Shown: piece after piece, positions 47,196-63,910 of the stretch
Numbering within the stretch: position 1 is the first letter of the stretch
Layout: each line of letters opens with the position of its first letter
Origin: Tubulanus polymorphus
Taxonomy: Eukaryota; Animalia; Nemertea
Reading direction: 5' to 3'
NCBI RefSeq assembly: GCF_964204645.1
Contig: NC_134031.1
Span: 19,103,910-19,167,909, forward strand
DNA length: 64,000 nt
Made by a program: the position numbers and the translations under genes
Notes under the pieces: model-generated
The model's database searches: none
Told to the model about the DNA's origin: nothing
Seen by the model: the letters and a program-made list of their open reading frames with translations, nothing else

Positions 47196-50100
47196 TTAGT
47201 TACCGCGTGAACTGCTATCTGCTTTACTATTCCTTCTACTCGTTTTACCGTTACCTGTGTCACCGTGAGTCATCTTTAATTTGACGGAATCGGAGCCACT
47301 CCCGCCCCCTGACGACTGAATCGCCGTCGCCTTCGTACTGGTCGGTTTCTCAGCTATAGACGAAGAGGCGTTGCTAAACGACGAACGGGCGTTGATCTTT
47401 GGGAGATTGATGGCTTGATGGTAGGGACTAGAGTTAGCGCGCGGTCGCACGCTCAATTCGACCGGTTCTTTGACCGGTGAAATGCTGCCGCTGCGGGTTT
47501 GCCGAGCCGGAGAGACGGAAGCTCGTCGGGAAGACGTCGTCGAATCGCGACGTTGTTGATCTCCGTTGTAGATCAGTTCGAACGTATGCGACGTTTTCAG
47601 CGGAAGTATCGGCTGGTTTTTACGCGCCTTGTCGAAACATTCCAAACTCATCCCTGCAAAAAACGGACACAAACATTAAATAATTATACAGAAACATAAA
47701 AACATTGATTATAGAGTATTAGAGTTTGGATCAGGCAATGTGTTATAATAGGTTAGGCCAAGTATAGTTAGTTACCTAATTGTTGGTGGTAAGCTTTTCT
47801 AATCGGATGGGCTTATACCAACATGTGGTTTGTGAAAATATTTGGTCGTGAAACTAAACCACAGACGGGTTACTGACTTGGTGAAAAAGCAATGAGCTGG
47901 TATCTAGTGGGGTCTAATGTTTAGAGCGCTTTGCTAACACTCCCGCGTTTTTGAAGTTGAATTCCGATTTTTGTGAATGTCACTTTAAAGTACAGCCCAT
48001 GAAATGGGAGCTAGAAAAGATCGCTCTTCCGAAGTTAAAGTCATAACTTAAGTCGAACTGGATCCACTCACCTATAGTCTGTTCAATAATAGGTGGCAGC
48101 ACATCCTTCAACACTTCGCAGTTTATATTCAATGCAGGATTGATATTGATTTCGATCAACCAAACTTTCATGTTGTCATCGATCATAAAATCGAATCCGT
48201 AGATAGCGAAGAATCCGACTTTTGAGCCGAGTTTGTGTCGAACGCACTCAAAACAATGACGCATTATCTTCTGCATTTGTTTCTGAAAATACAAACTAAG
48301 TCTTAACAAAATTTTTCTGGTCTAAAATGTTAAAATCAATTGATTTTTCATGAATCACGTATTGATAAAGAAACACGCGTTCAATGGCAAAATTCCAAGT
48401 TTTCCCTAAGTTTTAGCCAAAATTTGTCAAATTCCCTGATTTTTTTAGAATCACTTAGTTTTCCACGTTTTTGGGAAAATTGGTTAGCCACCCTGTATGA
48501 AATCAAAAGCCAGTCTTAAATCTAAGCCTCGACCCAGGGCACACAGCTGACACAGGGCACACAGTAGAAGTATGAACTGAATGTCACTAATCATTCAAAT
48601 CAAAGCTGAAAACGTTCGTTTTCAAAAGAATTGACATTTTCATGTGTGTGACTCGTTCATAGGAAGTACATTAAACATTGCCTTCCAGTGAAAAAGGCAC
48701 TTTAAAACTTAAAGCATTATCACGAGCATCTTCTTCATACTTACGGCTAATACATTAAAAACCCAGTCTTTCTGTAAACCTTTCTCAGGAGCGACTTTCT
48801 CATTGATATATTCATTAAAACGTTCCTCGCTCCACACCGTGTCTTCCTTCATTTCTTTATACATCGGATCTTTCTTTTGAATATACTGTTCAAAATACAA
48901 AACCACATACAGAATGAATCAGTCATAATAAGACTATTAACCCCTTATAGGTTTTGGACGTATCTTTCACGTCAATAGAAGTTCAATTTAACCCTTTCAG
49001 TGCTCACTAATACCCTAAAGTGCGGGAGATAATTTGAATTTTTTTTAGACATTCCAGCCCAGTGTGTCGAATTACGGGCTGTAGTGCGTCTACACAGTGC
49101 AGTGTATTGTTATTTACTAAGTGTTTGACAGGTACTGCCATCATTCATTAGAGATAAAAAGTAATTACTACTAAAATCTGTCACGGAATGGAAATTTTCC
49201 TCTGATTCAATAGATAAACTCACAATGAGATCGTTATGTCTTTATTACTAGAACAGACCATCGCTGATTTATACACCGCACTGCAGTGTAAACACACAGA
49301 AAGGGTTAACCGTAGCTATAAATGAGTACCTGATTGGTAAGATGAGTTGTCATATCCGCGTCATCTTTATTATATTTATGAATCGACAGACGTAGATATC
49401 CACCGTGGTAGTATAACATGAACGGACTCGTACTGGGAATCATCATATACGCGCGGATATCGAACTTCTTACCCTCAACGAGTAACGGATCGTTGATGTA
49501 CCTCTGAACGATTCGCGGCATTCGTCTGATCGTCAACTTGCGTCCGGGTTGATTCTCCGAACGCTCGTCTCGTTCTTGTATCGTTTTCTTTATTTCGTCC
49601 AAGTTGCGAAACAAATAAATGCCTTTCCCTTGATTCAGACCGGTCGGTTTACAAATCCATATTTCACCATCTGCAGAAATAAACAGTGAACATTCTAAAT
49701 ATTTACTTTAATCAGTCGAAAAGGTTGGTTACACTGAACATGTAAACAACCAAAATGAGCCAAGACCAGTCTTACATCTTCAAATGGACCCTGTACCTTA
49801 CTGATATGAGTGTTGGCTTAATAAAAAAAGCTCAGTTAAACATAAAAAAGTACATTTCGATTTCATCAAAAGTTTAAGCTTAACAAGGTTAAGTTTTTAT
49901 TGGTGTCTTCATTGAAATCATGAAGTAACAAATAAACAAATATTCGAAGTCTGCTCCTGAGTTTATTATTTTCTAAGGTGGATTTGATTCTATTCCAGGA
50001 GTGCTATCCAAGTAAGGGTCCGATAAGAACGACTGAACCAGTTGAATATCTCCTAATCTCATTATCACACTCACCATTGTAGGTTTCTAAAAATCGTTCC

Positions 50101-53100
50101 CTCTCATTTTTGTCGTCGATGTTATAAGTTTCCGGGAAGATGTCGGTGAATTTAAGTCGCGCGCGCGATTTTTTCAACGTCGACATCACTCGTTCGTATT
50201 CCTTCAATGAATTAATCAATCCGAGTTTATTCGTCAGCATTGAACAGTTCGGTATATGATTCACTAATTGTTCACCTACAAATAACGAAGATTTCCTTCA
50301 TACCTTTTACATGTACATAGCAATATTTCAACTGTTCCAGCCAAGTTTCACAGTTTTGCGTCAAAATTTGTAAATGTTCAATGAAATCTATGAGCTCCAA
50401 AGACAGAGTGGCCACTTTTAATTGACTAAATGAACCAAATTTAATACTATCTAAGGTATCTTGCATTGATCCAAAATAGGGGACAAAAAAAGAAGCAAAA
50501 CTCTGTGAAGTAAAAGTGCTGTAGCTTGATATCATTATAGTAAATGGACCACAGGAGGCGCTTAAGGAAAGAAAATGGTTTAACTGAATATCAGGCACTA
50601 TAGCAACTGAATTTCTGTTCTTGATGTAAAACAAGAGTTCATGATAGCTAGAGAGTTTTTCAATTTTTAAGTTTCAGATTAGTTTAGAGCTGGTTTCATT
50701 TTCTCGCGTACGCGAAATTACCTTCTTTGAACGTGTTGAAGTTAATAGCACCTTTAGACTCAGTCCATTTGAGTTTGAAATTATCACAGTATTTGTCGGT
50801 TGTACGTTTCCAACCTAAAGCCAGGAGTGGTGTCTCTACCCTGCAGCAGAATGATATACATAAACAAAGGGGTCAATGAATGAAGCCAGGAAAAAAGTAC
50901 GACGAATAATTTTGAGATTGAAATGGTTGAAACTAACAGCGAAACTCCATTGTGTCCACCAATATAAAACACCGGTGTCTGATTCGCTGAAATCGATACT
51001 TTAGGAGCTCGATCTCGTTGTTTATCGGATGGTTTCGACTGACTCGTAGCGGCAGCAGCAGCAGCAGCAGCTGTCATCGCAGCTGCTGCACCAGTAGTGG
51101 ATGATGTCATCATTGTCGTCTGGCGGTCATCTTTCCGCGATGGAGAAGTTTGTAACTTACGTGGAACTGCAAAAACAAAATTAAATGCAATTAAACAGTT
51201 GTAGATGCATCAGGTCCATGTCTACAGTTGCACTTCAAATACAATAATTTGACCAGTGCTCAAATTTGGCTCAGGCCTGGTCACATATTAACTTTTGCCA
51301 AATGAGGCCCGAATAATGCTCATGTAACCACGGCGCTTGACCAGTAATATCATTAATTTCCTATTTCTATCATATATCATCGTCACCTAAATTCAATCGA
51401 TGATAAAATTAATATCAAAATCATCATCATTATTACTATAAAAAATCTATGATGAAAATAATATCTTGAAGTCCTCAAAATATACTATATTCCACTTGTT
51501 TTAGAAAATACAACTTTAAAGTCATTCCATAAGTCAACGTTTATTTGTGATAGGTTTTGTATGGAACTGGCACCTAATCTTCAATAAAATATCTCAAGCA
51601 GAATTAGTTTTGTTTTTAATTTCTGATCGCGTTGACTATTTCAATCGGATAATTGATTACCCGCGGCGTCAATCACAGAATCACGAGTTCATCGGGTCGA
51701 AACGACAGAAATAATCCTCGAGGTCACGCGGAGCCGAAGAAGCGTTTACACGTCGCTAAGCAACTGTGGTAAACAGACGAGAAATCCATCACTGCGACGA
51801 ATGGCATCGAAATGCAATTGCTTTTAAAAATCTCTATTGATCTCGATGTTGAGAGAGAGAGAGAGAAAGAGAGGTATTCGCTGTGACTTTATAATGGAAA
51901 TCAGATTGATTAATTTAAATTCACGAAGCATCAATAAAATCACTTTGAATAATAACCTAAATTTGAAATGATCATCAATTACTAGTGAACAATGAGTCTC
52001 ATTGTTCACCTGATCCCGGCGACCGGCTGGAGTCATTTCAATTTTGATTCAATTTTCATACAAGAATGCCAACCATTCCCCGCATCAATGAAAGACCTTC
52101 GCGATTCATACTTAGACCAAAGTGATTTTGATTTTGTTTTCCTAATTAGATGAACTATGTATCATTTGAAACATCAAGAGATGAATTGAGTGTTCAGGTC
52201 AGGTGTCCACACAGGTTAGGTGTCCATACAGGTCAGGTGTCCACACAGGTCAGGTGTCCACACAGGTCAGGTGTCCACACAGGTCAGGTGTCCACACAGG
52301 TCAGGTGTCCATACAGTTCATGTATCTAGAGGCTGCTACCGATGTCACTTCAAAAATAACACGCTCAGTGGATTTCTCACAATATGAATGTTCTCCTGTC
52401 AAACTAATGGCAAGAAAAATATTTTGTAGTAAAACGAAACTAAAAGAGGTTTTCATTGCTAAATATCAGCGGGTCAATCTACATTATAGCCTGCATATCA
52501 TTCAAATCAAACCTTTGTAGTTAAATGCCAAAGTAAGAAGTCTCCCGATCTTCCATAGTTTCAAAGACAATAACAATCTGTTGGCAAGTAACAAGGTCCG
52601 TGTGACCAAATTCACCGAGTTAAAGACAAGTCACAATGTTAATATCCGTAAACTACCTGAAATCACTCCATCATTGAAACTGGTATCCTCCTGAACTATA
52701 CTAGAAGTTGTGCCCATTTTCTGTTGAAATCAATCGCACTCGAACGAACGGTGTAAAATCCGTGCCGTCTACTAAACAAACTCCAATTAAACAAAACCAT
52801 AGCTACAAACATTTATACATACATACCCGATGACATTATTATCGCACATAATTCATCGTGATTTTTTGCAACGATTGAAGAAAGTTAATTCAGTTATGGA
52901 AGGTTTATTCAGTGTAGCAGTGTGTCGCGGCGAACTGGTTTTAATGATTCTCTATAACGCCGTGAACCGAATGCTAAACTTTGTTTCCTAGTTTTACATT
53001 AACATCATTAGCCTATTAAAACTCACTACCTCGCGGTAATCTGTGTCAAAATCTCATTCAGTAATACACCGGTGAAAAATCATTTCGAAATATCGTTTCA

Positions 53101-56100
53101 CCAAATCGAGCTATAGTCGACATTTGTTTAAAACCCGACCCTTCGTTAACGTTAAATCTTTTATATTTTGCGTACGCACTTTATGAAACTTTTCTAGTCG
53201 CACCAATCACAGTAACGCTTGAATTCAAACCACAACTTCGGGACTTCCGAAATATGTCCTCGTTTTTTCATCAAAAGCTGCCATTACATGACCTGGAACA
53301 CTGTCCACACAGGTGCCAAATTGGCCAGTGTCTGTTTGGCGCTCTCTAATTAGGCACGGACCAAATTTGGCTCAGGCCTGGTCCGTGCCGAATAGTTTTA
53401 GTGTGATCGCGGTTTAAGTGTCCATGAAATTCCTCATTAGATTAGTAAACATGAAGTCAAATATTACTTTCGCTACTAGTGCAATAGTAGTGGTAGATGA
53501 AATACAGTGTGAAAAACCAGTTGATTATTGAAAGATCGTTGTTTTTTATCATCAAATATAAGAAACATATTTCTCAGTACGGGTTGCCTGTCAGCGTGCC
53601 TATTCATACCAGTAATTGAAATATAGACACAAGATTCTTTGTTATAGAATATATAACGTGACAAGTTTTTTCACAAGCTCTAGATTCCAGAAAAACCGGT
53701 ATCTATCATAATTCATATCGAAAACAATCAGAAGAAAATGTAAAGCAATATTTATCATATCAAGGTATAGAGAATATTGAAAAGGACTCTCGACCTGTTT
53801 TATTTGTCTTCAGATCCCATTCCTCACTGATATTTGACTTAACTAATTAAATTTGGAAACAATAATCAATTGACTTTCGTATCAGGAATGAAATCAATTC
53901 ATTTTCTCAATAATTTGCCTCACAATTCAAATATTTATCTATAACAAAGCTAACAACAGCCCTACAACTCTGGATCGGATTTCATACCTAATCTTTAACA
54001 GACCAAACTCTCCCTCTCTCCCTCCATATTACACAAGGCTCTTCCTCCCTTTCTGCCACCAGATCCAACCAAACCTCTTACCAAACTTTTCCCATTGCAG
54101 CCTCACCCAATTCCAGTACCCAACTCTCCAACTATCAGTTCTAGTACCCAACTCTCCAACTATCAATTCCAGTACCCAACTCTCCAACTATCAGTTCCAG
54201 TACCCAACTCTCAAATTATCAGTTCCAGTACCCAACTCTCAAACTATCAGTTCCAGTACCCAACTCTCCAACTATCAGTTCTAGTACCCAACTCTCAAAC
54301 TATCAGTTCCAGTACCCAACTCTCCAACTATCAGTTCTAGTACCCAACTCTCCAACTATCAGTTCCAGTACCCAACTCTCCAACCATCAGTTCTAGTACC
54401 CAACTCTCCAACTATCAGTTCCAGTACCCAACTCTCCAACCATCAGTTCTAGTACCCAACTCTCCAACCATCAGTTCTAGTACCCAACTCTCCAACTATC
54501 AGTTCTAGTACCCAACTCTCCAACTATCAGTTCCAGTACCCAACTCTCCAACCATCAGTTCTAGTACCCAACTCTCCAACCATCAGTTCTAGTACCCAAC
54601 TCTCCAACTATCAGTTCTAGTACCCAACTCTCCAACCATCAGTTCTAGTACCCAACTCTCCAACTATCAGTTCCAGTACCCAACTCTCCAACTATCAGTT
54701 CCAGTACCCAACTCACCCCTCAGTTCAGTGTTCTGTGATCTGATTGAATACTTACAATGACCGCTATTAGCAGAAACAGAGAACCTACGACAGTAACTAG
54801 CCAACGTATCGTTCAGATAATGATTCGTCGGTTTCTCCGAGCCGTCCGTCGAACAGAAATCACCGGTTCTCGATCGGCGGCGAAGAAGTTTAATTCGTCC
54901 ATCATCGGACGGTAGATAAATATCCCAAGCTTCTAACAAGTGGTTGAACATCGCGGTTGAATGACCGTTAACTCGATCACAGCGACGTACATCGGGTAAA
55001 TTGAGTTCAATCATCAACTTCGTCTCGATCTCAATACACCAGCAACCGGTTCAATATCATATACAATCAGCTATATTCGTCTTTTTAATTCGGTTCGATA
55101 AATCACATTAATGTACCATCGATCGTGCTTCCTCGTGCATACATCACCGTCATATACAATCTAATTCCACAATAAAGAAACAGTCTGGAATGTTTCCAAA
55201 ATGTTTCCGAAATGTTTCCTCGAGCTGTTGATGTTTCGACTATATTCTAATAGTCATTTACAGGAAAACTGAGGTTACAACAAAATTATGAAATATTAAT
55301 ATGTACCATCCATAATGAACCTATCCTAATATTTTAGTGTGATTGCTTCATTAGTCTGTCATTGCTCTGGACTGTAATTTTGTAGAAACTTTAGAATTCC
55401 TGAAGATGACTAATTGGATGAAATAAACAAATAGCTCAGGAAAACATTTCAGATTTTGTTTTTCTTTTATATAGTGGAATTTGATCATTTTTTTTTCTCT
55501 GAATGTTTCATCAAGATTAACATCAGATTCATGTTGCATCTCACATTCACCAGGAAACTGGTGCTATAAGCTATAATTACAGTCACCTCTAATACTCTCC
55601 CCCTCCCCCTCCCTTGAACTGGAAAACTTATAAATACAATCAAATTCACTACTGCCTCCTGGTTCTTATTTTACAGAAACTATTGTAATCATGATTTATC
55701 ATAATCATTCAATTCATTGAGAACAAACAGGTCGTCATTTTAGTAAATCATAACTTACAGTAGTTTTTGTGAAGCTAACCCCGAGATAATCGACAGCAGA
55801 CTGATTTTTTCAAAATGATCCTTCCACTAGTTTCTAGAACTTCATGTCGCTGTTGCTCACAAGTCGTCGTCAGCTGTTTTCGTACAAATATTAGAACCAT
55901 TTTTTTGTTTGGTAGAAAAATGCTCAATAGCATCGAGATTATATTGGATTTGTGATGTATTGTGAGAAGCACGTTTTACGATGATGATGATGATGAATTG
56001 CACCGCATTTCACATTCACCAGGAATTATAGGTAATAACCTCTAAATATCCCGACCGATTGCCAACAGAAGCTCGAGGTATACAATTTTCCAAATGGCGA

Positions 56101-58325
56101 AAAAAAATACAACCACTTGTACATGTTATCTTCTGTTAGTAATTCAAGGCCTTCTACACCAGTCTCAGAATGCATTTTCTGTCGACTACTTTTGCAAAAT
56201 ATTCTGGGGGATTCAGATTCCTGAGATTTCCTACAGATGCTCCGCGCTTTAGGCACCCCAAATGTTGGCTTCACCACTGTATGAATTATCAGGATGAAAA
56301 TCGCACCCCAAACACAGGGCTTTTATAGCTATTTAGGCCAAAAAATTGATACTTTGTTTCTCATTTCTGTTGAGCAGGTCCGGCTGCCTATCTACAGTGT
56401 ACTTTACGTTTTTAATATCACGATCAGGCTAACCATAACAGACCCAGCAAAAACAAACCAATTACATTTTTTTAGCAGTTTACAAAAGTGACTGGGCTGA
56501 TTAGGAGAAACAAGGTCGCATTTACTCAGCCTTACATAGTTTTTAGGGTTCAACCAGTCCAACTCAAACTGCGGAACCGCTGGGTTAGAGCTAGTCGCAG
56601 ATTCTTCATACGAACTAAAACCCATTTACGCCGCAAATGACGAAACCTTAAGAAAATATTCTCGATAATCGATGACGGATCGACGAAAAAAATAGAAACC
56701 AAAAAATATTTCCCTTCGTTACGCGACGAAACTTCGATAGATTCATCGATGAAATATCGAAACAACAGACAAAACACATCGAGAATAAATAGCGACATGC
56801 GTGTGTAACTATAGCTACTAATCACTGAGAACTATTAAACAATCCATCTTACATCACGCTACCACAACAACTACGTGCTCCAATACGATTGGTCAGTTGT
56901 ACCGTTACACGCTGCGCGCTAAGCAACCGGCTGTACTCATAATTATCAAACTTATAAATGATTCAGAAATAGAGACGCACGAGATGAAGTCCCCGCACAT
57001 GAACTATTGTTCACTAAACCGCAATGTTGAGGGTTAAGATTAACTTTCACATTTCAGTTCGGCATCAGAATGTTTACCAATGGTTCCCACCGATTACACA
57101 AATTCAAAATCAAAAGTTTTTCATGAGCGACTTTACAATTTTCCCAAATAGAAATGAATAGATACCAGCAAACTTACTGGTCCCGCGAGCTAGAGTTCAG
57201 AGAAAATATCAAATCAAGCCAAAAAATCTATCAATCAATTTAAGATCAGTCTAAACAAATATCAAACATTATCAATTCTTATCAATTCATAAACGAAATA
57301 AAAAACCTTCGTTAATTCGATTAGGCCTATAAGAATGTGCCGATAATCTCTTACCTGATTTCATAGTGAGACTGTTTGCACATGATAGAGAAATGATCTA
57401 ATAAACAGAGTCAACGCCTCCATCATTGAACAGCTATCATCCAATCAAACTGTTCAATAATACTCTCCACTCAATCATCTATCATTACAATCTACGTTTT
57501 GTCTTCAAAATTCTGATGTGCGCCAAACTTTCATATCATAGACTAAAATACATGGTACCTTTCTGACACCTATATTTATATAGACTCTTAAATTCAATGA
57601 GGGACATTTCATCCCGCAGTAAGAACGAAAAATAGAGTCCGAAATGTTTCCCGGAGGTAGTAGAATCTTCAGATTTCTGGAATATGGTAGAAACATCGAA
57701 TAAACTGAACCTCGAAGAAATAAAGTGGATTTCTTTCTTAATGAGGTATTCCATATTATCATTACAACACAGATAGACTTATCATTGAGAGAAACCCATA
57801 ATATCTATTTAAACAACTACGGCTCAAGGAAACATTTTGGACTCCTATTTCTTCTTCTAAATGAAGTATTTTTATATATTATCGTTACGCGGACTCAGAA
57901 TGTTTTATCAATCGTTTTTTCATGCTACCCGGAGACTGAAGCATCCATTTAGATATTCATAAAACTACAACTTGAAAATGAACTCGGAAATTCTGTCCAT
58001 CATCCTACAGTTCATATAAGCAATACATGACAGTTCTGATAATTCACGTGCTAATGTAAATTCAACGTTCATCCTCTGATAAGCACAGTCATTCATTAAT
58101 CTAATTATCACTTATCTAAAAAGATTTTTTTTCGATTTTTCATTGATTTTGAAACCCAGTTCTGGAGACTTACTCGATATTACGAACACCTACGTACCAT
58201 CAGGCCCTATATCCGATATATGTGGAATAATGCGGTGTATGCCTGACCCGACGAGACCTCTCTATTACAGTAATCTGATTATATGTATTTCCATAAGGCA
58301 GATAATAGGATTTATTAGGCTATGA

Positions 58326-58365
<40 letters not shown>

Positions 58366-61300
58366 GCCGAACTGGCAGAGTGGATTTAACATATAGATTC
58401 AATAGGATTGAGATCATTATGCGTAAAAAGCCTGTTTGTAATCAGTGCTAATCGCGATATATTTCAGTGTCCCCAATAAATAAACACCGGATCAACTTTC
58501 TGTGCGCTAATCTACTCTTTGAAAATGTGGGCCCTGTTGCACTGTTATGGCTTAGATTGAAGACCAGTCTTAGACTACGTTAGCTTTTGGCCAATCATAA
58601 GAGTAACTGCTCTTACAGCATAAGAGCAGACTGAGACAAATTTCACAACTTAAAATCAGTTTTGACTTGAAGTCACATCTATACAACCGACCCCGGGGAG
58701 GTTTTAGTTACATGTGAGGGTGAGGAAACTGGATATAATGGAGATAACGCTTCTTCTAAATAGAGGCCTATGAATCTGAGGGGATACGAAATGAAACTCT
58801 CGGGGCGGGGAAAAGAAAGTTACATTATACAAATAAAGGTAAAACGGTAAAAAAAACTTATCATAATTTTCATGAAATTGTTCGTAGATTTCATCCCCTG
58901 AAGCGGCTAAAACACTGCAACCGCGCGTCGATAAACGCTACTAACCAAACAAAACCTTACGGCGAGAATCATTTAAAAAAATTTCATCACTGTCGGAAAT
59001 TACAACACAAAAACGTCGTCGTCGTCGCTCGCGCTCGGCTGTTAGTGGAATACACCCGACGTTTGAATACGAAATTTCATTCGCGCCCAAAAAAACCCGG
59101 CGTGGTTTATTGACGTAGAGATCATTGTTTACATTCGTCGTAGTCGTCGTCGTCTGCCGGTGACAACAATACCGCGATTCAACTGCGTCTGCTGCTACCA
59201 ATAGCAACCAGATATACAACTCAATTTAAACATTCGAACTAATGCGGCACCGATATCAATGATCGCTCTGTGACTACGACCTAGCACGATATTTAACGTT
59301 TTATAGAAATTTAGGTATCCATTCGGCCAACCAAACAAACATTTGAGTCAATTACAGCAAAACCTCTATGTATCTTTGCCGACAGTTTTAGAGGTGCGGC
59401 CATCCCTTTCACTTTTACATCCACCCCTCTGAAAATTAGTCATCCCTTATAAGATATCTGCTACCCCTCTAAAAATATGATGACAATTCTATCAATGCTT
59501 ATAATGATTATCACCGCTAACTAGCAAGTTCATCTAATTTGAAAAAATAGCGGAATACATTTTTTCGGAGACCAAAATCTTTGCTACTTCAGCAGCCACA
59601 ATGTTATATGCTAAAGAATAAAGAATGAATGAATGCAGCCCCTCTAACCCCCCCCCCCCCCCACTAGCCCCCTCCCCCTGTTGATAGAGAAATATATGAA
59701 TTATATAAAAACATGAATGCAGCTACATTGCACAAACTGATTAATTCAATAATTATACAGCAAACTTTGTGAATTACTGAGAAAGTTGAGTCAAAATGAA
59801 TCGAAGTTTAAAAGCAATTTGATGTTTCTACGATAACTTCAATCTGTCTATTGAAATTATTGATATTCTGATGAAACTGATGACGATGATGAAATCTGAG
59901 TTCTCAGTCAGACCATATCAATTCAAAGATTATTGTTCGAGTCATTAAAAACAGATTTGGACTTCCAAAATTCCCAAATTTAGTTACGATTTAGAGGTTC
60001 AACATTTGAAATGAACTTACTTCAATCCTATAATAAGGGTTTATCTATAACCAACAATCACGGAGCTGGGGTCAACTATCAGAAGATTTAAATCCCAACC
60101 CAGTTCTACAGTTATGAATGAAATTTGACATTCAAATCAAATTGTCATTATCAATATACAATTGTGGAGCACCGGTACGGTGAAAATATGTGACTTACAG
60201 AACTGTGTTATCGTATCATCATCAACTAATCCTAACCTGACTTCCCCCTTGGAACAAACCCTGGAGTATCGTAAGCTTTTTTGAAAGTGGGATCAGCGAG
60301 AGGAGACACTTACATGATTTATCATCTAACTTGCAATCAGAGCGAGTTTGGTTGATTGTTTTAACCGGTGATTTCGTTCTGTGTTTCTGTTGTTGGTGTT
60401 TAGCGGTTGTATTTGTTTTAGGAGCAGCAGACGAACTCTTCGCGTTACTCTGTGAATCTCCTGCTCCTTTCAGCGGCGACGATGAGTTGTCACTCTGAGC
60501 AGGAGATATTAAACAACTCGTTGGTTTCTCCTGATTACAGCCGCCGACCAGTTCACCCTCCTGAACATCCGACGGAGCTGTATCATTATGAGCGGCGTTC
60601 CCGGATGAAATCGGAGTCGACTCCAGAGTCGTCAGTCGAGGTTTTGCTCCGTAATCGGTCGCGAGCGTCGCTTCGTCTTTAATTACGATTTCCTCCTTTT
60701 CATCCTCGTCGTCATCATCTGAACTTTCCATTACGTTCAGTTTTTCCAGAACTTCGATTTCCAGATTTTCATCGTCGTCTTCAGATCGTTTGCAACCTTC
60801 AGGAGTTGAAGCGGCGCCATCTTCTGGCAAATACAAGATGAAACTCGGCTCAGACGTCATCTCGGCGTTTAAACCGAAACCGGACGCGGCGATCGAATCT
60901 ATCGCCGATTCGTCGATTTGCCGATTCGATTTCAATGATTCGTAAGCTTGTCGACGTTTTTCGGCGAGTTCATCGGCGTCGTGTGATTTCACTAATTCAT
61001 CGTCAGTGTCGCCGGCATCTAACGCATCATCCTCGCTTTCATCGTCGCTCAAAGCGAATATCGACCTGGACGACGGAGGTTTCTTGAATTTCGATTTTTT
61101 CCACGGATGTGTCGGGCAATAACTGAAATTTAGAATCGTCTTGAATATTCAGAATCATCAGCAAAGTTATTCAGGAAAATCTTTATTGCAAAAACCATTT
61201 TTTTCTAGCTTGTCTTATCACGGGGAACTGGAAGGGCAGGGTCCGAAAAAATGTTGTTTTTCTTCGGGGGAAAGAAAGAAGCCATGCGACAAGCATGGGT

Positions 61301-61938
61301 TCCCCCCCTCAGGGTGGCCACTTTTATTTGACTATTCCCAGACATGTACATTGTTTTCCCTGATTTGATCTGTTAAGAATCTAATCAATTAACACAGTCA
61401 AATACAAAAGACATAGACGTAAACTGTTTGATTTTACACCCGATCTAGCGATCTCAACAAATTTCCCTGAACTTTTCCTGATTTTTGGCTTTCCCTGTCT
61501 TTTTATAGAAAAGAAATTCCCTGGTTTTTCCCTTATATCCAGGTAAGTGGCGCCACCCTGCAAGTTTTTGAGCTTGTTTAGGTACAGAGGCAGATGGAGG
61601 CGGATCTAGGAATATTCGAAGGGCAGGGTCTGAAATAAGGGTATTTGTCGGGGTAATGAGGCCATGGTTAACTAGATCCACAGCACTCTGTGGAGACTCG
61701 ATAGTGGTTTTAGGGGGATATCAGGAACTATTACTATCTTTCACTCACCTTTTGCAAATACCCATCAACCAAGTATCAATAGATTTGAAGTGATATTTGC
61801 ACGAATGATACGCCGTAGCCTTGAACTTATAACTATCGAAAACTTGTACTTTTCCCTTCTGCCACCGGGCGCCGATCGTTTTTATACCGTCACCCGCCCA
61901 GATCTCGACGTGAACCATGTTGTGACGCTGTTTCTTCG
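47196..61938 (-). CDS. TTLL10: TTLL10-like tubulin polyglycylase with N-terminal NlpC/P60-like module and acidic linker (5' end beyond window)
   Basis: Exons 61938-61749, 61122-60314, 51166-50938, 50840-50722, 50275-50075, 49670-49330, 48885-48745, 48282-48072, 47653-47196, all phase-compatible. TTL motifs VNHIPN..LTNKLGL, FPETY, WICKPTGLNQGKGI, VQRYINDPLLVEGKKFDIRAY, HLTNQ, YGFDFMID..VWLIEININPAL. The join 60314 to 51166 is inferred. Confidence 0.88.
48992..49305. mobile_element. piggyBac-like MITE with TTAA TSD
   Basis: TTAA|CCCTTTCAGTG...CACAGAAAGGG|TTAA. Confidence 0.8.
51752..51764. promoter_or_regulatory. RFX X-box-like motif GTCGCTAAGCAAC near a candidate internal TTLL10 promoter
   Basis: Lies in a CpG-richer patch about 90 nt upstream of a - strand donor (GCCGCGG|GTAATC at about 51660); similar GCGCTAAGCAAC at about 56915-56927. 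Confidence 0.45.
52195..52315. repeat. 18-bp minisatellite CAGGTCAGGTGTCCACAC-like
   Basis: About 6 copies. Confidence 0.9.
54105..54715. repeat. About 28-30-bp minisatellite TTC(C/T)AGTACCCAACTCTCCAACTATCAG
   Basis: About 20 highly similar copies. Confidence 0.92.
54756..55014 (-). CDS. Candidate alternative first coding exon of TTLL10 (MIELNLPDVRR...ANSGH)
   Basis: ATG at 55014, 259 nt open, strong donor T|GTAAGT in phase 1 matching the acceptor at 51166; CpG-rich like true exons here. Confidence 0.55.
55121..55300 (-). mobile_element. Single-arm, decayed Penelope-like insertion D related to element A
   Basis: TSD ATGTACCATC (55111-55120 and 55301-55310). - strand reads CTGTAAA-T-GACTAT-TAGAAT-ATAGTC-GAAACATC, and the AATTCCACAATA motif is present. 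Confidence 0.6.
58328..58362. repeat. (TA)n microsatellite
   Basis: Direct inspection. Confidence 0.95.
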
Positions 61939-63629: not shown

Positions 63630-63910
63630 GAGAAGCCAGTTCCACATTTAGATGAATTCCTTTCTGAACACAGTTCCACACGAATACGTGCATTGAATTT
63701 GCGGACTCAGTTCCACAGTTCTGTGGGTGGAATTTGACTCTGAACCCAGTTCCACAGTTGTGTGGGTTCAATTTGGCTCTGAAGTCAGTTTCACAGTTGT
63801 ATGGGTTAGATTTGTCTCTGGACCCAGAGTTCTCAATTATTATTGGAGTTTAATTAGTTTATGGATCCAGTTCAGTTCTTAAATTGACTTCGGACCCCTT
63901 CTCCAGTTGG
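63630..63910. repeat. Tandem array of Harbinger-MITE TIR-like units (GAACCCAGTTCCACAGTT, about 38-40 bp period)
   Basis: Repeated TIR-like units; similar array at about 45795-46045. Confidence 0.65.

What the first reader, a model, noticed from the sequence alone, without database searches (positions are those of the whole stretch)
60314..61938. NlpC/P60-like papain-fold module spliced in frame to the TTLL10 glycylase: a possible writer-eraser fusion
Seen: exon 61938-61749 encodes KKQRHNMVHVEIWAGDGIKTIGARWQKGKVQVFDSYKF..KSIDTWLMGICKSYCPTHPW. An acidic low-complexity exon follows, and its phase-1 donor matches the first TTLL10 acceptor (51166). Known: NlpC/P60 hydrolases have an HVxIYxGxG..IHA strand bearing the catalytic His, and many cleave gamma-glutamyl linkages. 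Tubulin glycylation branches from a Glu gamma-carboxyl, and vasohibin is a precedent for a papain-like tubulin-tail enzyme. Inference: this may be a hydrolase for tubulin side chains coupled to a glycyl ligase. The catalytic Cys exon would lie outside the window. The C-x3-C-x2-H tail may bind metal.
Basis: partly seen in the sequence, partly recalled or inferred. Interest (0 to 1): 0.8.

Follow-up and report, generated by a model that had tools for sequence, protein, structure and literature searches.

The report
Peptidase domain fused to tubulin glycylase
In this ribbon worm the tubulin polyglycylase TTLL10 is very probably made as one protein with an N-terminal cysteine amidase of the bacterial cell-wall-hydrolase (NlpC/P60) type; similar fusions run from ciliates to salamanders and none turned up in birds or mammals, so the domain is a credible candidate for the still unknown enzyme that removes glycine chains from tubulin.

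Summary
Window 61938-61749 and 61122-60314 (minus strand) are two exons of one gene of about 56 kb, NCBI LOC141908801 of Tubulanus polymorphus (1066 aa). An RNA-derived contig joins 61749 to 61122 exactly. It leaves exon D at 60314 and runs on for 550 nt. The RefSeq model joins 60314 to the TTLL10 exon at 51166.

The N-terminal domain folds as NlpC/P60 (AlphaFold pLDDT 92.6; VIA Z 12-13). Cys and His are invariant in 140 of 140 relatives, but the canonical third-residue position holds Ile/Gly. The C-x3-C-x2-H tail is about 91% conserved.

The NlpC/P60-TTL fusion is not local. 93 of 236 collected homologues carry both domains, from sponges, cnidarians, molluscs, echinoderms, sharks and salamanders to ciliates. 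Many come from transcript assemblies, with linkers as short as 39 aa. Free-standing copies exist in Ciona, Monosiga, rotifers and reptiles. No bird, mammal, frog, arthropod or nematode name appeared.

The function is inferred. I read it as an amidase acting on tubulin-tail side chains, most likely a deglycylase, by analogy with trypanothione synthetase-amidase. I found no paper describing this fusion.

The parts
61749..61938 (-). Exon C of the NlpC/P60-TTLL10 gene (P0001 residues about 168-230). It holds the basic loop KKSKKQRH, the catalytic-His strand MVHVEIW, and the strands up to DTWLMGIC.
   Evidence: Translation; splice sites; RNA contig X2 record 13 covers exactly 61749-61938; H177 and E179 invariant in 140/140.
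61123..61748 (-). Intron of 626 bases, GT..AG on the minus strand. It contains a high-copy repeat at about 61200-61600.
   Evidence: Joint 61122/61749, 'skips 626', ends CT..AC on the plus strand, in X2. Word depth is 500-2300 there against about 20 nearby.
60314..61122 (-). Exon D. It holds the end of the NlpC/P60 domain (C229-x3-C233-x2-H236-x-W238) and then an acidic, low-complexity, probably disordered linker (pI 4.5). It ends in a phase-1 donor.
   Evidence: Translation; RNA contig aligned 60314-61122 and ending exactly at 60314; conservation of C/C/H/W; pI.
51167..60313 (-). Intron of about 9.1 kb between the linker exon and the first TTLL10 exon. No convincing ORF was seen inside it.
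   Evidence: No X2 contig depth at 59800-60199, and the X2 contig's remaining 550 nt do not lie in 56000-60313; ORF list; RefSeq model P0001.
47199..51166 (-). Seven exons encoding the rest of the linker, the TTLL10-type TTL/ATP-grasp ligase domain (P0001 about 576-935) and a Ser-rich C-terminal tail. Approximate exon matches: 51166-50934, 50839-50720, 50276-50055, 49725-49324, 48888-48688, 48282-48070, 47654-47199.
   Evidence: tblastn of P0001 on the window; Pfam TTL PF03133 at 194 bits; acceptor sequence.

Best explanation
SHOWN: the finding is the middle of one minus-strand gene of about 56 kb. Exon 1 lies at G000:C7:19207339-19207497. Exon A lies at L009 5196-5346. Exon B, with the catalytic Cys, lies at L009 4100-4306, which is 4.1 kb past the window end. 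Then come window exons 61938-61749 and 61122-60314, followed by seven TTLL10 exons from 51166 to 47199. The gene encodes a 1066-aa protein with three parts: (i) a basic (pI 9.6) NlpC/P60-fold Cys-His domain at residues about 74-240; (ii) an acidic disordered linker; (iii) a TTLL10-type ATP-grasp ligase. The same NlpC/P60-TTL architecture occurs across animals and in ciliates and other protists, and the domain also exists free-standing. INFERRED: the N-domain is an active cysteine amidase that works on the acidic C-terminal tails of tubulin. It most likely hydrolyses the amide bonds of the glycine side chains that TTLL3/8 start and TTLL10 extends, either at the gamma-glutamyl-glycine branch or at Gly-Gly bonds. 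That would make TTLL10 a bifunctional ligase/amidase able to set or limit chain length, as trypanothione synthetase-amidase does with a papain-like amidase joined to an ATP-grasp ligase. I put the fused gene architecture at about 0.9. I put 'hydrolase of tubulin-tail side chains (Gly or Glu)' at about 0.55, and deglycylase specifically at about 0.35.
For: Gene and fusion: the exon phases fit. An RNA contig uses both splice sites of exon D and continues 550 nt. P0001 equals the model and maps collinearly on the window. The gene is single-copy in the genome. 93 of 236 collected homologues carry both domains, with linkers of 39-1629 aa. Many come from transcript assemblies with no room for introns, for example 926 aa on a 3040-nt contig, plus MMETSP/TSA 'complete' ORFs. 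Fold and active site: AlphaFold pLDDT 92.6, pTM 0.87. All top 50 Foldseek hits are NlpC/P60. VIA Z is 12-13 over 113-134 residues at 2.5-3.3 A. The family profile hits gamma-D-Glu-L-diamino-acid endopeptidases 3npf and 3pvq at E 3e-5 and 2e-4, aligning LDCCGLVR with VDCSGLVR and HVEI with HVGI. C110, H177, E179, N133, Q134, Y136 and R115 are invariant in 140/140. Substrate logic: the domain is strongly basic with a conserved K/R loop next to the His. The nearest characterised relatives cut amides made by a Glu gamma-carboxyl, which is the chemistry of tubulin branch points (established knowledge). No enzyme that processes glycine chains is known (PMC12340829). Precedent for a papain-like amidase plus an ATP-grasp ligase acting on one bond: PMC2427367. 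Bacterial ATP-grasp peptide ligases are linked to papain-fold peptidases predicted to reverse the tag (PMC3495828). In a turtle the free-standing gene sits 4.5 kb upstream of a TTL gene on the same strand.
Against: No catalytic or substrate data exist. The canonical third triad position is non-polar (I189/G190), so the active site is remodelled and could serve other chemistry. Pfam NLPC_P60 scores below its gathering cut-off for this protein (19.7 against 23). The far side of the 60314 junction was not observed in reads, because the stretch limit and the single read-laying run prevented it. P0001 is a computed model of the same genome. In Ciona and Monosiga the free-standing gene is not next to a TTL gene, so the link to TTLL10 is not obligatory. 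Mouse and Xenopus TTLL10 work as polyglycylases without this domain (PMC12340829). A ligase and an opposing hydrolase on one chain need regulation that is not evident here. For protist fusions the TTL domain is only 25-35% identical to this one, and its subfamily was not established.
Confidence: 0.5

Rival explanations
1. The domain is a deglutamylase or gamma-glutamyl branch remover. It would clear glutamate side chains from the same tail glutamates so that glycylation can take over; it would not remove glycines.
For: Its nearest characterised relatives cleave gamma-glutamyl amides. Glutamylation precedes glycylation on axonemes and recruits TTLL10 (PMC12340829). A fused enzyme that swaps one mark for the other avoids a futile cycle.
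Against: CCP carboxypeptidases already account for deglutamylation, including branch points (PMC12340829; PMC4230590). Nothing in the sequence discriminates Gly from Glu as the leaving group.
Confidence: 0.2
2. The domain is not a hydrolase of tubulin marks. It could be an acyl- or amido-transferase (as in the LRAT/PLAAT branch of the superfamily), a redox-regulated switch, or a binding module that docks TTLL10 on modified tails or on another substrate such as NAP1.
For: The canonical third residue is missing, and there are new invariant residues (second Cys C111, E179, R192). The superfamily includes transferases and non-catalytic members; RipD, for example, is among the fold hits.
Against: Cys and His are invariant in 140/140 sequences across eukaryotes, which argues for catalysis. 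Free-standing copies show the domain acts as an independent unit, so it is not merely a docking piece of TTLL10.
Confidence: 0.2
3. These are two neighbouring genes wrongly merged: an NlpC/P60 gene that ends in or after exon D, and a TTLL10 gene that starts at the in-frame ATG ATG about 50 bases into the 51166 exon.
For: An in-frame Met-Met lies early in the TTLL10 exon. Some species have separately annotated genes in the same order (turtle). Several mollusc models lack the TTL part. The junction's far side was not seen in reads.
Against: The RNA contig leaves exon D exactly at the 60314 donor, with no read-through coverage at 59800-60199, and continues 550 nt elsewhere. The phases match. Fused ORFs occur on intron-free transcript contigs of many species, and in protists with linkers of only 39-70 aa.
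Confidence: 0.07
4. The domain is an antibacterial or peptidoglycan-directed hydrolase acquired from bacteria, like the domesticated amidase effectors of ticks, and is unrelated to tubulin.
For: All structural neighbours are peptidoglycan hydrolases.
Against: The N-terminus (MDEELQKRETTSAEK...) is hydrophilic and has no signal-peptide-like hydrophobic stretch. The domain is fused to a cytoplasmic ligase. It is ancient and 45-72% identical across eukaryotes. It was not seen in arthropods or nematodes, which were also missing from the TTLL10-type fusion lists.
Confidence: 0.03

Closest known systems
Bacterial NlpC/P60 (MEROPS C40) DL-endopeptidases, especially the YkfC / dipeptidyl-peptidase VI group (PDB 3npf, 3pvq), RipA/RipB, SagA and CwlO
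   Same: Same fold (Z 12-13). Same order of elements. Catalytic Cys at the start of the helix in a D-C-x-G-L-V-R motif. Catalytic His on an H-V-x-I-aromatic strand. The G-D-L-V-F strand and the Q-A-Y motif are shared.
   Different: This protein is eukaryotic, cytoplasmic and basic. It has a second invariant Cys (DCC), Glu in place of Gly after the His (HVE), no polar residue at the canonical third position, and an added conserved C-x3-C-x2-H-x-W tail. It is fused to a TTL ligase. It usually scores below Pfam's cut-off.
Trypanothione synthetase-amidase / glutathionylspermidine synthetase-amidase
   Same: An N-terminal papain-like Cys-His amidase and a C-terminal ATP-grasp C:N ligase sit on one chain, making and breaking the same amide bond. 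The conflicting activities are regulated by domain arrangement (PMC2427367).
   Different: That amidase belongs to the CHAP branch and did not appear among the fold hits. The only CHAP hits were phage lysins at Z about 7.7. Its substrate is a small metabolite, and its ligase is not a TTL. The resemblance is therefore an independent, analogous fusion; the two are not homologous.
TTLL10 of mouse and Xenopus (the characterised polyglycylases)
   Same: The C-terminal ligase domain is 45-50% identical to vertebrate proteins named TTLL10 that carry the same fusion.
   Different: The characterised enzymes were studied without any such N-domain. The Xenopus tropicalis construct spans residues 105-570 (PMC12340829). 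No mammal, bird or frog name appeared in three searches for the N-domain.
Known tubulin-tail erasers: vasohibin-SVBP (papain-like detyrosinase) and CCP (M14) deglutamylases
   Same: These are hydrolases that reverse marks written by TTL-family ligases. Vasohibin shows that a papain-fold Cys enzyme can act on tubulin tails (PMC10318531).
   Different: They belong to different families: the transglutaminase-like cluster and the metallocarboxypeptidases. None is fused to its writer, and none removes glycine.

Membership tests
NlpC/P60 superfamily (Pfam PF00877 / clan CL0125, MEROPS C40) | Papain-like alpha+beta fold, with the nucleophile helix packed on an antiparallel sheet | tested here: met
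   AlphaFold model pLDDT 92.6. The Foldseek top 50 are all NlpC/P60. VIA Z 12-13, 113-134 residues aligned, rmsd 2.5-3.3 A.
NlpC/P60 superfamily (Pfam PF00877 / clan CL0125, MEROPS C40) | Catalytic Cys at the helix N-terminus, preceded by Asp (D-C-S/x-G) | tested here: met
   LDCCGLVR on exon B (L009 4100-4306). D109 is conserved in 139/140 and C110 in 140/140. The motif aligns with VDCSGLVR of 3npf.
NlpC/P60 superfamily (Pfam PF00877 / clan CL0125, MEROPS C40) | Catalytic His at the start of the H-V-G-I-Y strand | tested here: met
   HVEIW in window exon 61749-61938. H177 is conserved in 140/140. It aligns with HVGIY of 3npf.
NlpC/P60 superfamily (Pfam PF00877 / clan CL0125, MEROPS C40) | Third polar residue (His, Glu, Gln, Asn or Asp) on the following strand, the 'IHA' position | tested here: not met
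   The equivalent strand reads T-I-G-A-R. I189 is Ile/Leu/Val and G190 is Gly in 134/140.
NlpC/P60 superfamily (Pfam PF00877 / clan CL0125, MEROPS C40) | Sequence score above the family's curated threshold | tested here: inconclusive
   P0001 scores 19.7 bits against a cut-off of 23, and one relative (P0031) scores 23.6. A family profile reaches NlpC/P60 structures at E 3e-5.
NlpC/P60 superfamily (Pfam PF00877 / clan CL0125, MEROPS C40) | Cys-dependent amidase or peptidase activity | not testable with these tools
   This needs enzyme assays.
TTLL10 (tubulin polyglycylase, TTL family) | TTL / ATP-grasp ligase domain | tested here: met
   PF03133 at 194 bits, residues 618-915. PDB TTL and TTLL3/6/7 hits.
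TTLL10 (tubulin polyglycylase, TTL family) | Orthology to vertebrate TTLL10 as opposed to TTLL3/8 or the glutamylases | tested here: inconclusive
   The domain is 45-50% identical to proteins that NCBI names TTLL10 (Latimeria, Ambystoma, Polypterus) and that share the fusion. No tree with other TTLL clades was built. For protist fusions (25-35% identity) the clade is open.
Bifunctional amidase / ATP-grasp ligase (GspSA, TryS type) | N-terminal papain-like amidase and C-terminal ATP-grasp ligase on one polypeptide | tested here: met
   precedent in PMC2427367.
Bifunctional amidase / ATP-grasp ligase (GspSA, TryS type) | Homology of the amidase to the CHAP domain of GspS/TryS, and action of both domains on the same bond | tested here: not met
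   The fold neighbours are NlpC/P60 proper. No GspS or TryS entry is among the 50 best. Whether both domains act on the same bond cannot be tested here. This protein therefore resembles that family in architecture but is not a member of it.

The most novel reading that the evidence does not exclude
This conserved eukaryotic NlpC/P60 branch, whether fused to TTLL10 or free-standing, is the long-sought tubulin deglycylase. On this reading it is ancient in ciliated eukaryotes and was lost in birds and mammals, which would explain why work in mouse and human never found one. TTLL10 would then be ancestrally a self-editing ligase/amidase that sets polyglycine chain length.
Probability: 0.3. Interest if true: 0.92.

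Novelty: new variant of a known kind. Interest (0 to 1): 0.8.

Why it matters
Glycylation is the one major tubulin-tail modification with no known eraser. [quoted passage not shown] This gene carries a catalytically intact-looking cysteine amidase whose nearest characterised relatives cut gamma-glutamyl amides. Across much of eukaryotic diversity that domain is fused to the polyglycylase itself, yet the versions studied so far (mouse, human, Xenopus) lack it. That yields a concrete candidate with named catalytic residues (C110, H177) that can be tested with existing in vitro glycylation systems. It also changes the picture of TTLL10's ancestral architecture. Databases already label some members 'NlpC/P60 domain-containing protein'. 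However, I found no paper linking NlpC/P60 with TTLL10, tubulin tyrosine ligase or glycylation.

Tried and rejected
1. Pfam, PDB sequence search and the Atlas on the 62-aa window exon alone gave nothing usable. The exon is too short, and only the upstream exon and the family profile gave signal.

The spliced protein was examined only as P0001, which the protein search returned.

3. Read laying was limited to 6000 letters and one call. The junction partner in RNA remains unseen.

4. Runs X1, X3 and X4 look like DNA, because their contigs cross splice sites and introns. They say nothing about expression. Only X2 shows spliced contigs.

5. The idea of a paralogous free-standing copy in this genome is rejected: all matches belong to this one gene.

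6. The idea that free-standing genes elsewhere are always split annotations of a fusion is rejected. Ciona and Monosiga have unrelated neighbours, whereas the turtle does have a TTL gene next door.

7. Iyer et al. 2009 on amidoligases could not be read because it is not held. An earlier mention there or in other subscription papers cannot be excluded.

Full report
**What is in the sequence**

On the minus strand, 61938-61749 is an exon bounded by an AG acceptor and a GT donor. It reads KKQRHNMVHVEIWAGDG...DTWLMGICK. After a 626-base intron, the exon 61122-60314 continues with (S)YCPTHPW and then 260 codons of acid-rich, low-complexity sequence. It ends one base into a codon before GTAAGT. The acceptor at 51166 supplies the other two bases (T+TT = Phe). 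It opens into a frame that runs into the conserved start of the TTL domain, PVFYIGG.

**The rest of the gene**

The window is G000:C7:19103910-19167909. I fetched 20 kb beyond its end.

- 4.1 kb upstream lies an exon (L009 4100-4306) reading ...PKFLDCCGLVRQ...KPGDLVFISGIY. This carries the NlpC/P60 nucleophile motif and the GDLVF strand.
- One exon further up (L009 5196-5346) encodes the helix ending AKKYFGVPYKRKYW.
- The phases of all four exons interlock.
- The first coding exon lies a further 36 kb upstream, at C7:19207339-19207497.
- The genome holds no second copy.

The joined protein entered the session as P0001, returned by the representative search with exon B as query. It is 100% identical over that exon and 1066 aa long. 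NCBI names it 'uncharacterized protein LOC141908801 [Tubulanus polymorphus]'. It maps collinearly onto window exons C and D and onto seven TTLL10 exons down to 47199.

**Transcript evidence**

Of four runs that hold the stretch, X2 behaves as RNA. One contig of 1886 nt covers exactly 61938-61749 and 61122-60314, with the 626 bases skipped. X2 has no contig depth at 59800-60199, just beyond the donor. The contig's last 550 nt find no place in 56000-60313. So the 60314 donor is used, and the transcript goes on for at least 550 nt on sequence further away. That step rests on the RefSeq model and on comparative evidence.

**The fusion is general**

- The 68-aa Cys exon finds 285 proteins at E <= 1e-10.
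- Among the 236 relatives collected, 93 carry both the N-domain and a TTL domain, separated by 39 to 1629 residues.
- Named carriers include nemerteans, gastropods, bivalves, annelids, a brachiopod, corals, sea anemones, hydrozoans, four sponge classes, echinoderms, a hemichordate, a shark, sturgeons, Polypterus, coelacanth, caecilians and salamanders.
- Outside animals the carriers include Tetrahymena and several protists from MMETSP and EukProt.
- Many are from transcript assemblies with no room for an intron, for example 926 aa on 3040 nt. In protists the two domains are only 39-70 residues apart. Read-through annotation artefacts therefore cannot explain the pattern.
- Free-standing versions of 250-480 aa also exist, in Branchiostoma, Ciona, Styela, oysters, rotifers, a flatworm, choanoflagellates, ciliates, turtles, geckos and snakes.
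- In Ciona and Monosiga the neighbours are unrelated.
- In the tortoise Gopherus the gene lies 4.5 kb upstream of a TTL gene on the same strand.
- In three searches no bird, mammal, frog, arthropod or nematode name appeared. These searches were limited by length window and list size, so this is an indication and does not prove absence.

**What the N-domain is**

- Pfam gives only a sub-threshold NLPC_P60 match (19.7 bits against 23). This probably explains why precomputed annotations of these proteins list only TTL.
- A 71-sequence alignment (A1) gave an AlphaFold model with pLDDT 92.6 and pTM 0.87.
- The 50 best Foldseek matches in the PDB are all NlpC/P60 enzymes.
- The VIA second look gives Z 12-13 over 113-134 residues at 2.5-3.3 A, with Trichomonas NlpC1, BCE_2878, MAP1272c, SagA and RipB.
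- The family profile reaches the gamma-D-glutamyl-L-diamino-acid endopeptidases 3npf and 3pvq at E 3e-5 and 2e-4. It pairs LDCCGLVR with VDCSGLVR and HVEI with HVGI.
- Across 140 domains, C110, C111, R115, N133, Q134, Y136, H177 and E179 are invariant.
- C229, C233, H236 and W238 are kept in 127-134 of 140. They lie in a confidently modelled segment (pLDDT 92).
- The canonical third triad position is non-polar (I189/G190). The site has therefore been remodelled relative to the bacterial enzymes.
- The domain is strongly basic (pI 9.6), with a conserved Lys/Arg loop just before the His. The linker is acidic (pI 4.5).

**How it probably works (inference)**

A basic Cys-His amidase, tied to or co-inherited with the enzyme that lengthens glycine chains on tubulin's acidic tails, most plausibly hydrolyses amide bonds of those side chains. 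The chemistry of its nearest relatives is cleavage of an amide made by a Glu gamma-carboxyl. That matches the branch point of glycylation and of glutamylation.

A papain-like amidase and an ATP-grasp ligase that oppose each other on one chain have a solved precedent in trypanothione synthetase-amidase (PMC2427367). Bacterial ATP-grasp peptide ligases are linked to papain-fold peptidases predicted to reverse their tags (PMC3495828). The field states that no glycine-chain-processing enzyme is known (PMC12340829).

Against this reading:
- There are no biochemical data.
- The third triad residue is missing.
- Mouse and Xenopus TTLL10 work without the domain.
- The unlinked free-standing genes show that the tie to TTLL10 is not obligatory.
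- Deglutamylation, transfer chemistry or a binding role remain open.

**Novelty**

The domain is a divergent eukaryotic branch of a known superfamily, fused to a known ligase. Some database entries already carry the automatic name 'NlpC/P60 domain-containing protein'. Full-text searches for NlpC with TTLL10, with tubulin tyrosine ligase or with glycylation returned nothing. A broad classification of papain-like enzymes does not mention the fusion. Subscription literature could not be checked. I rate it a new variant of a known kind, of high interest because it makes the deglycylase question directly testable.

Noticed in passing
window 63630-63880 (also L001; copies on G000 contigs C4, C6, C8, C9, C10, C12, C22, C37): A stretch of about 120-250 bases has more than 120 matches at 70-89% identity elsewhere in the genome. 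Many are in overlapping tandem register, especially on C10, C9 and C8. It looks like a satellite or tandem-repeat family with one short array upstream of exon C.
   Followed up: no
window 61200-61600, 56200-56400 and 59400-59600: Contig word depth in all four runs jumps to hundreds or thousands against about 20-30 nearby, with many short joints and loose ends. These look like high-copy interspersed repeats inside the two introns.
   Followed up: no
L009 3041-3526 (window-equivalent about 65040-65530): A CT/GA-rich simple-sequence tract gives long Ser-Leu and Arg-Glu pseudo-ORFs on both strands, inside the intron between exons B and C.
   Followed up: no
G000:C7:19171256-19207338: The first intron of the gene is about 36 kb, far longer than the others. 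Its content was not examined.
   Followed up: no
window 60394 and 60522-61110: Run X4 lacks 3 bases at 60394, an in-frame indel in the low-complexity linker. The X2 RNA contig differs from the reference at 10 positions of exon D. These are probably allelic variation in a fast-evolving linker.
   Followed up: no
P0001 residues 110-111 and the family alignment A1: The residue after the catalytic Cys is also an invariant Cys (DCC, 140/140). Bacterial NlpC/P60 has Ser there. It might be a redox or metal site next to the nucleophile.
   Followed up: partly
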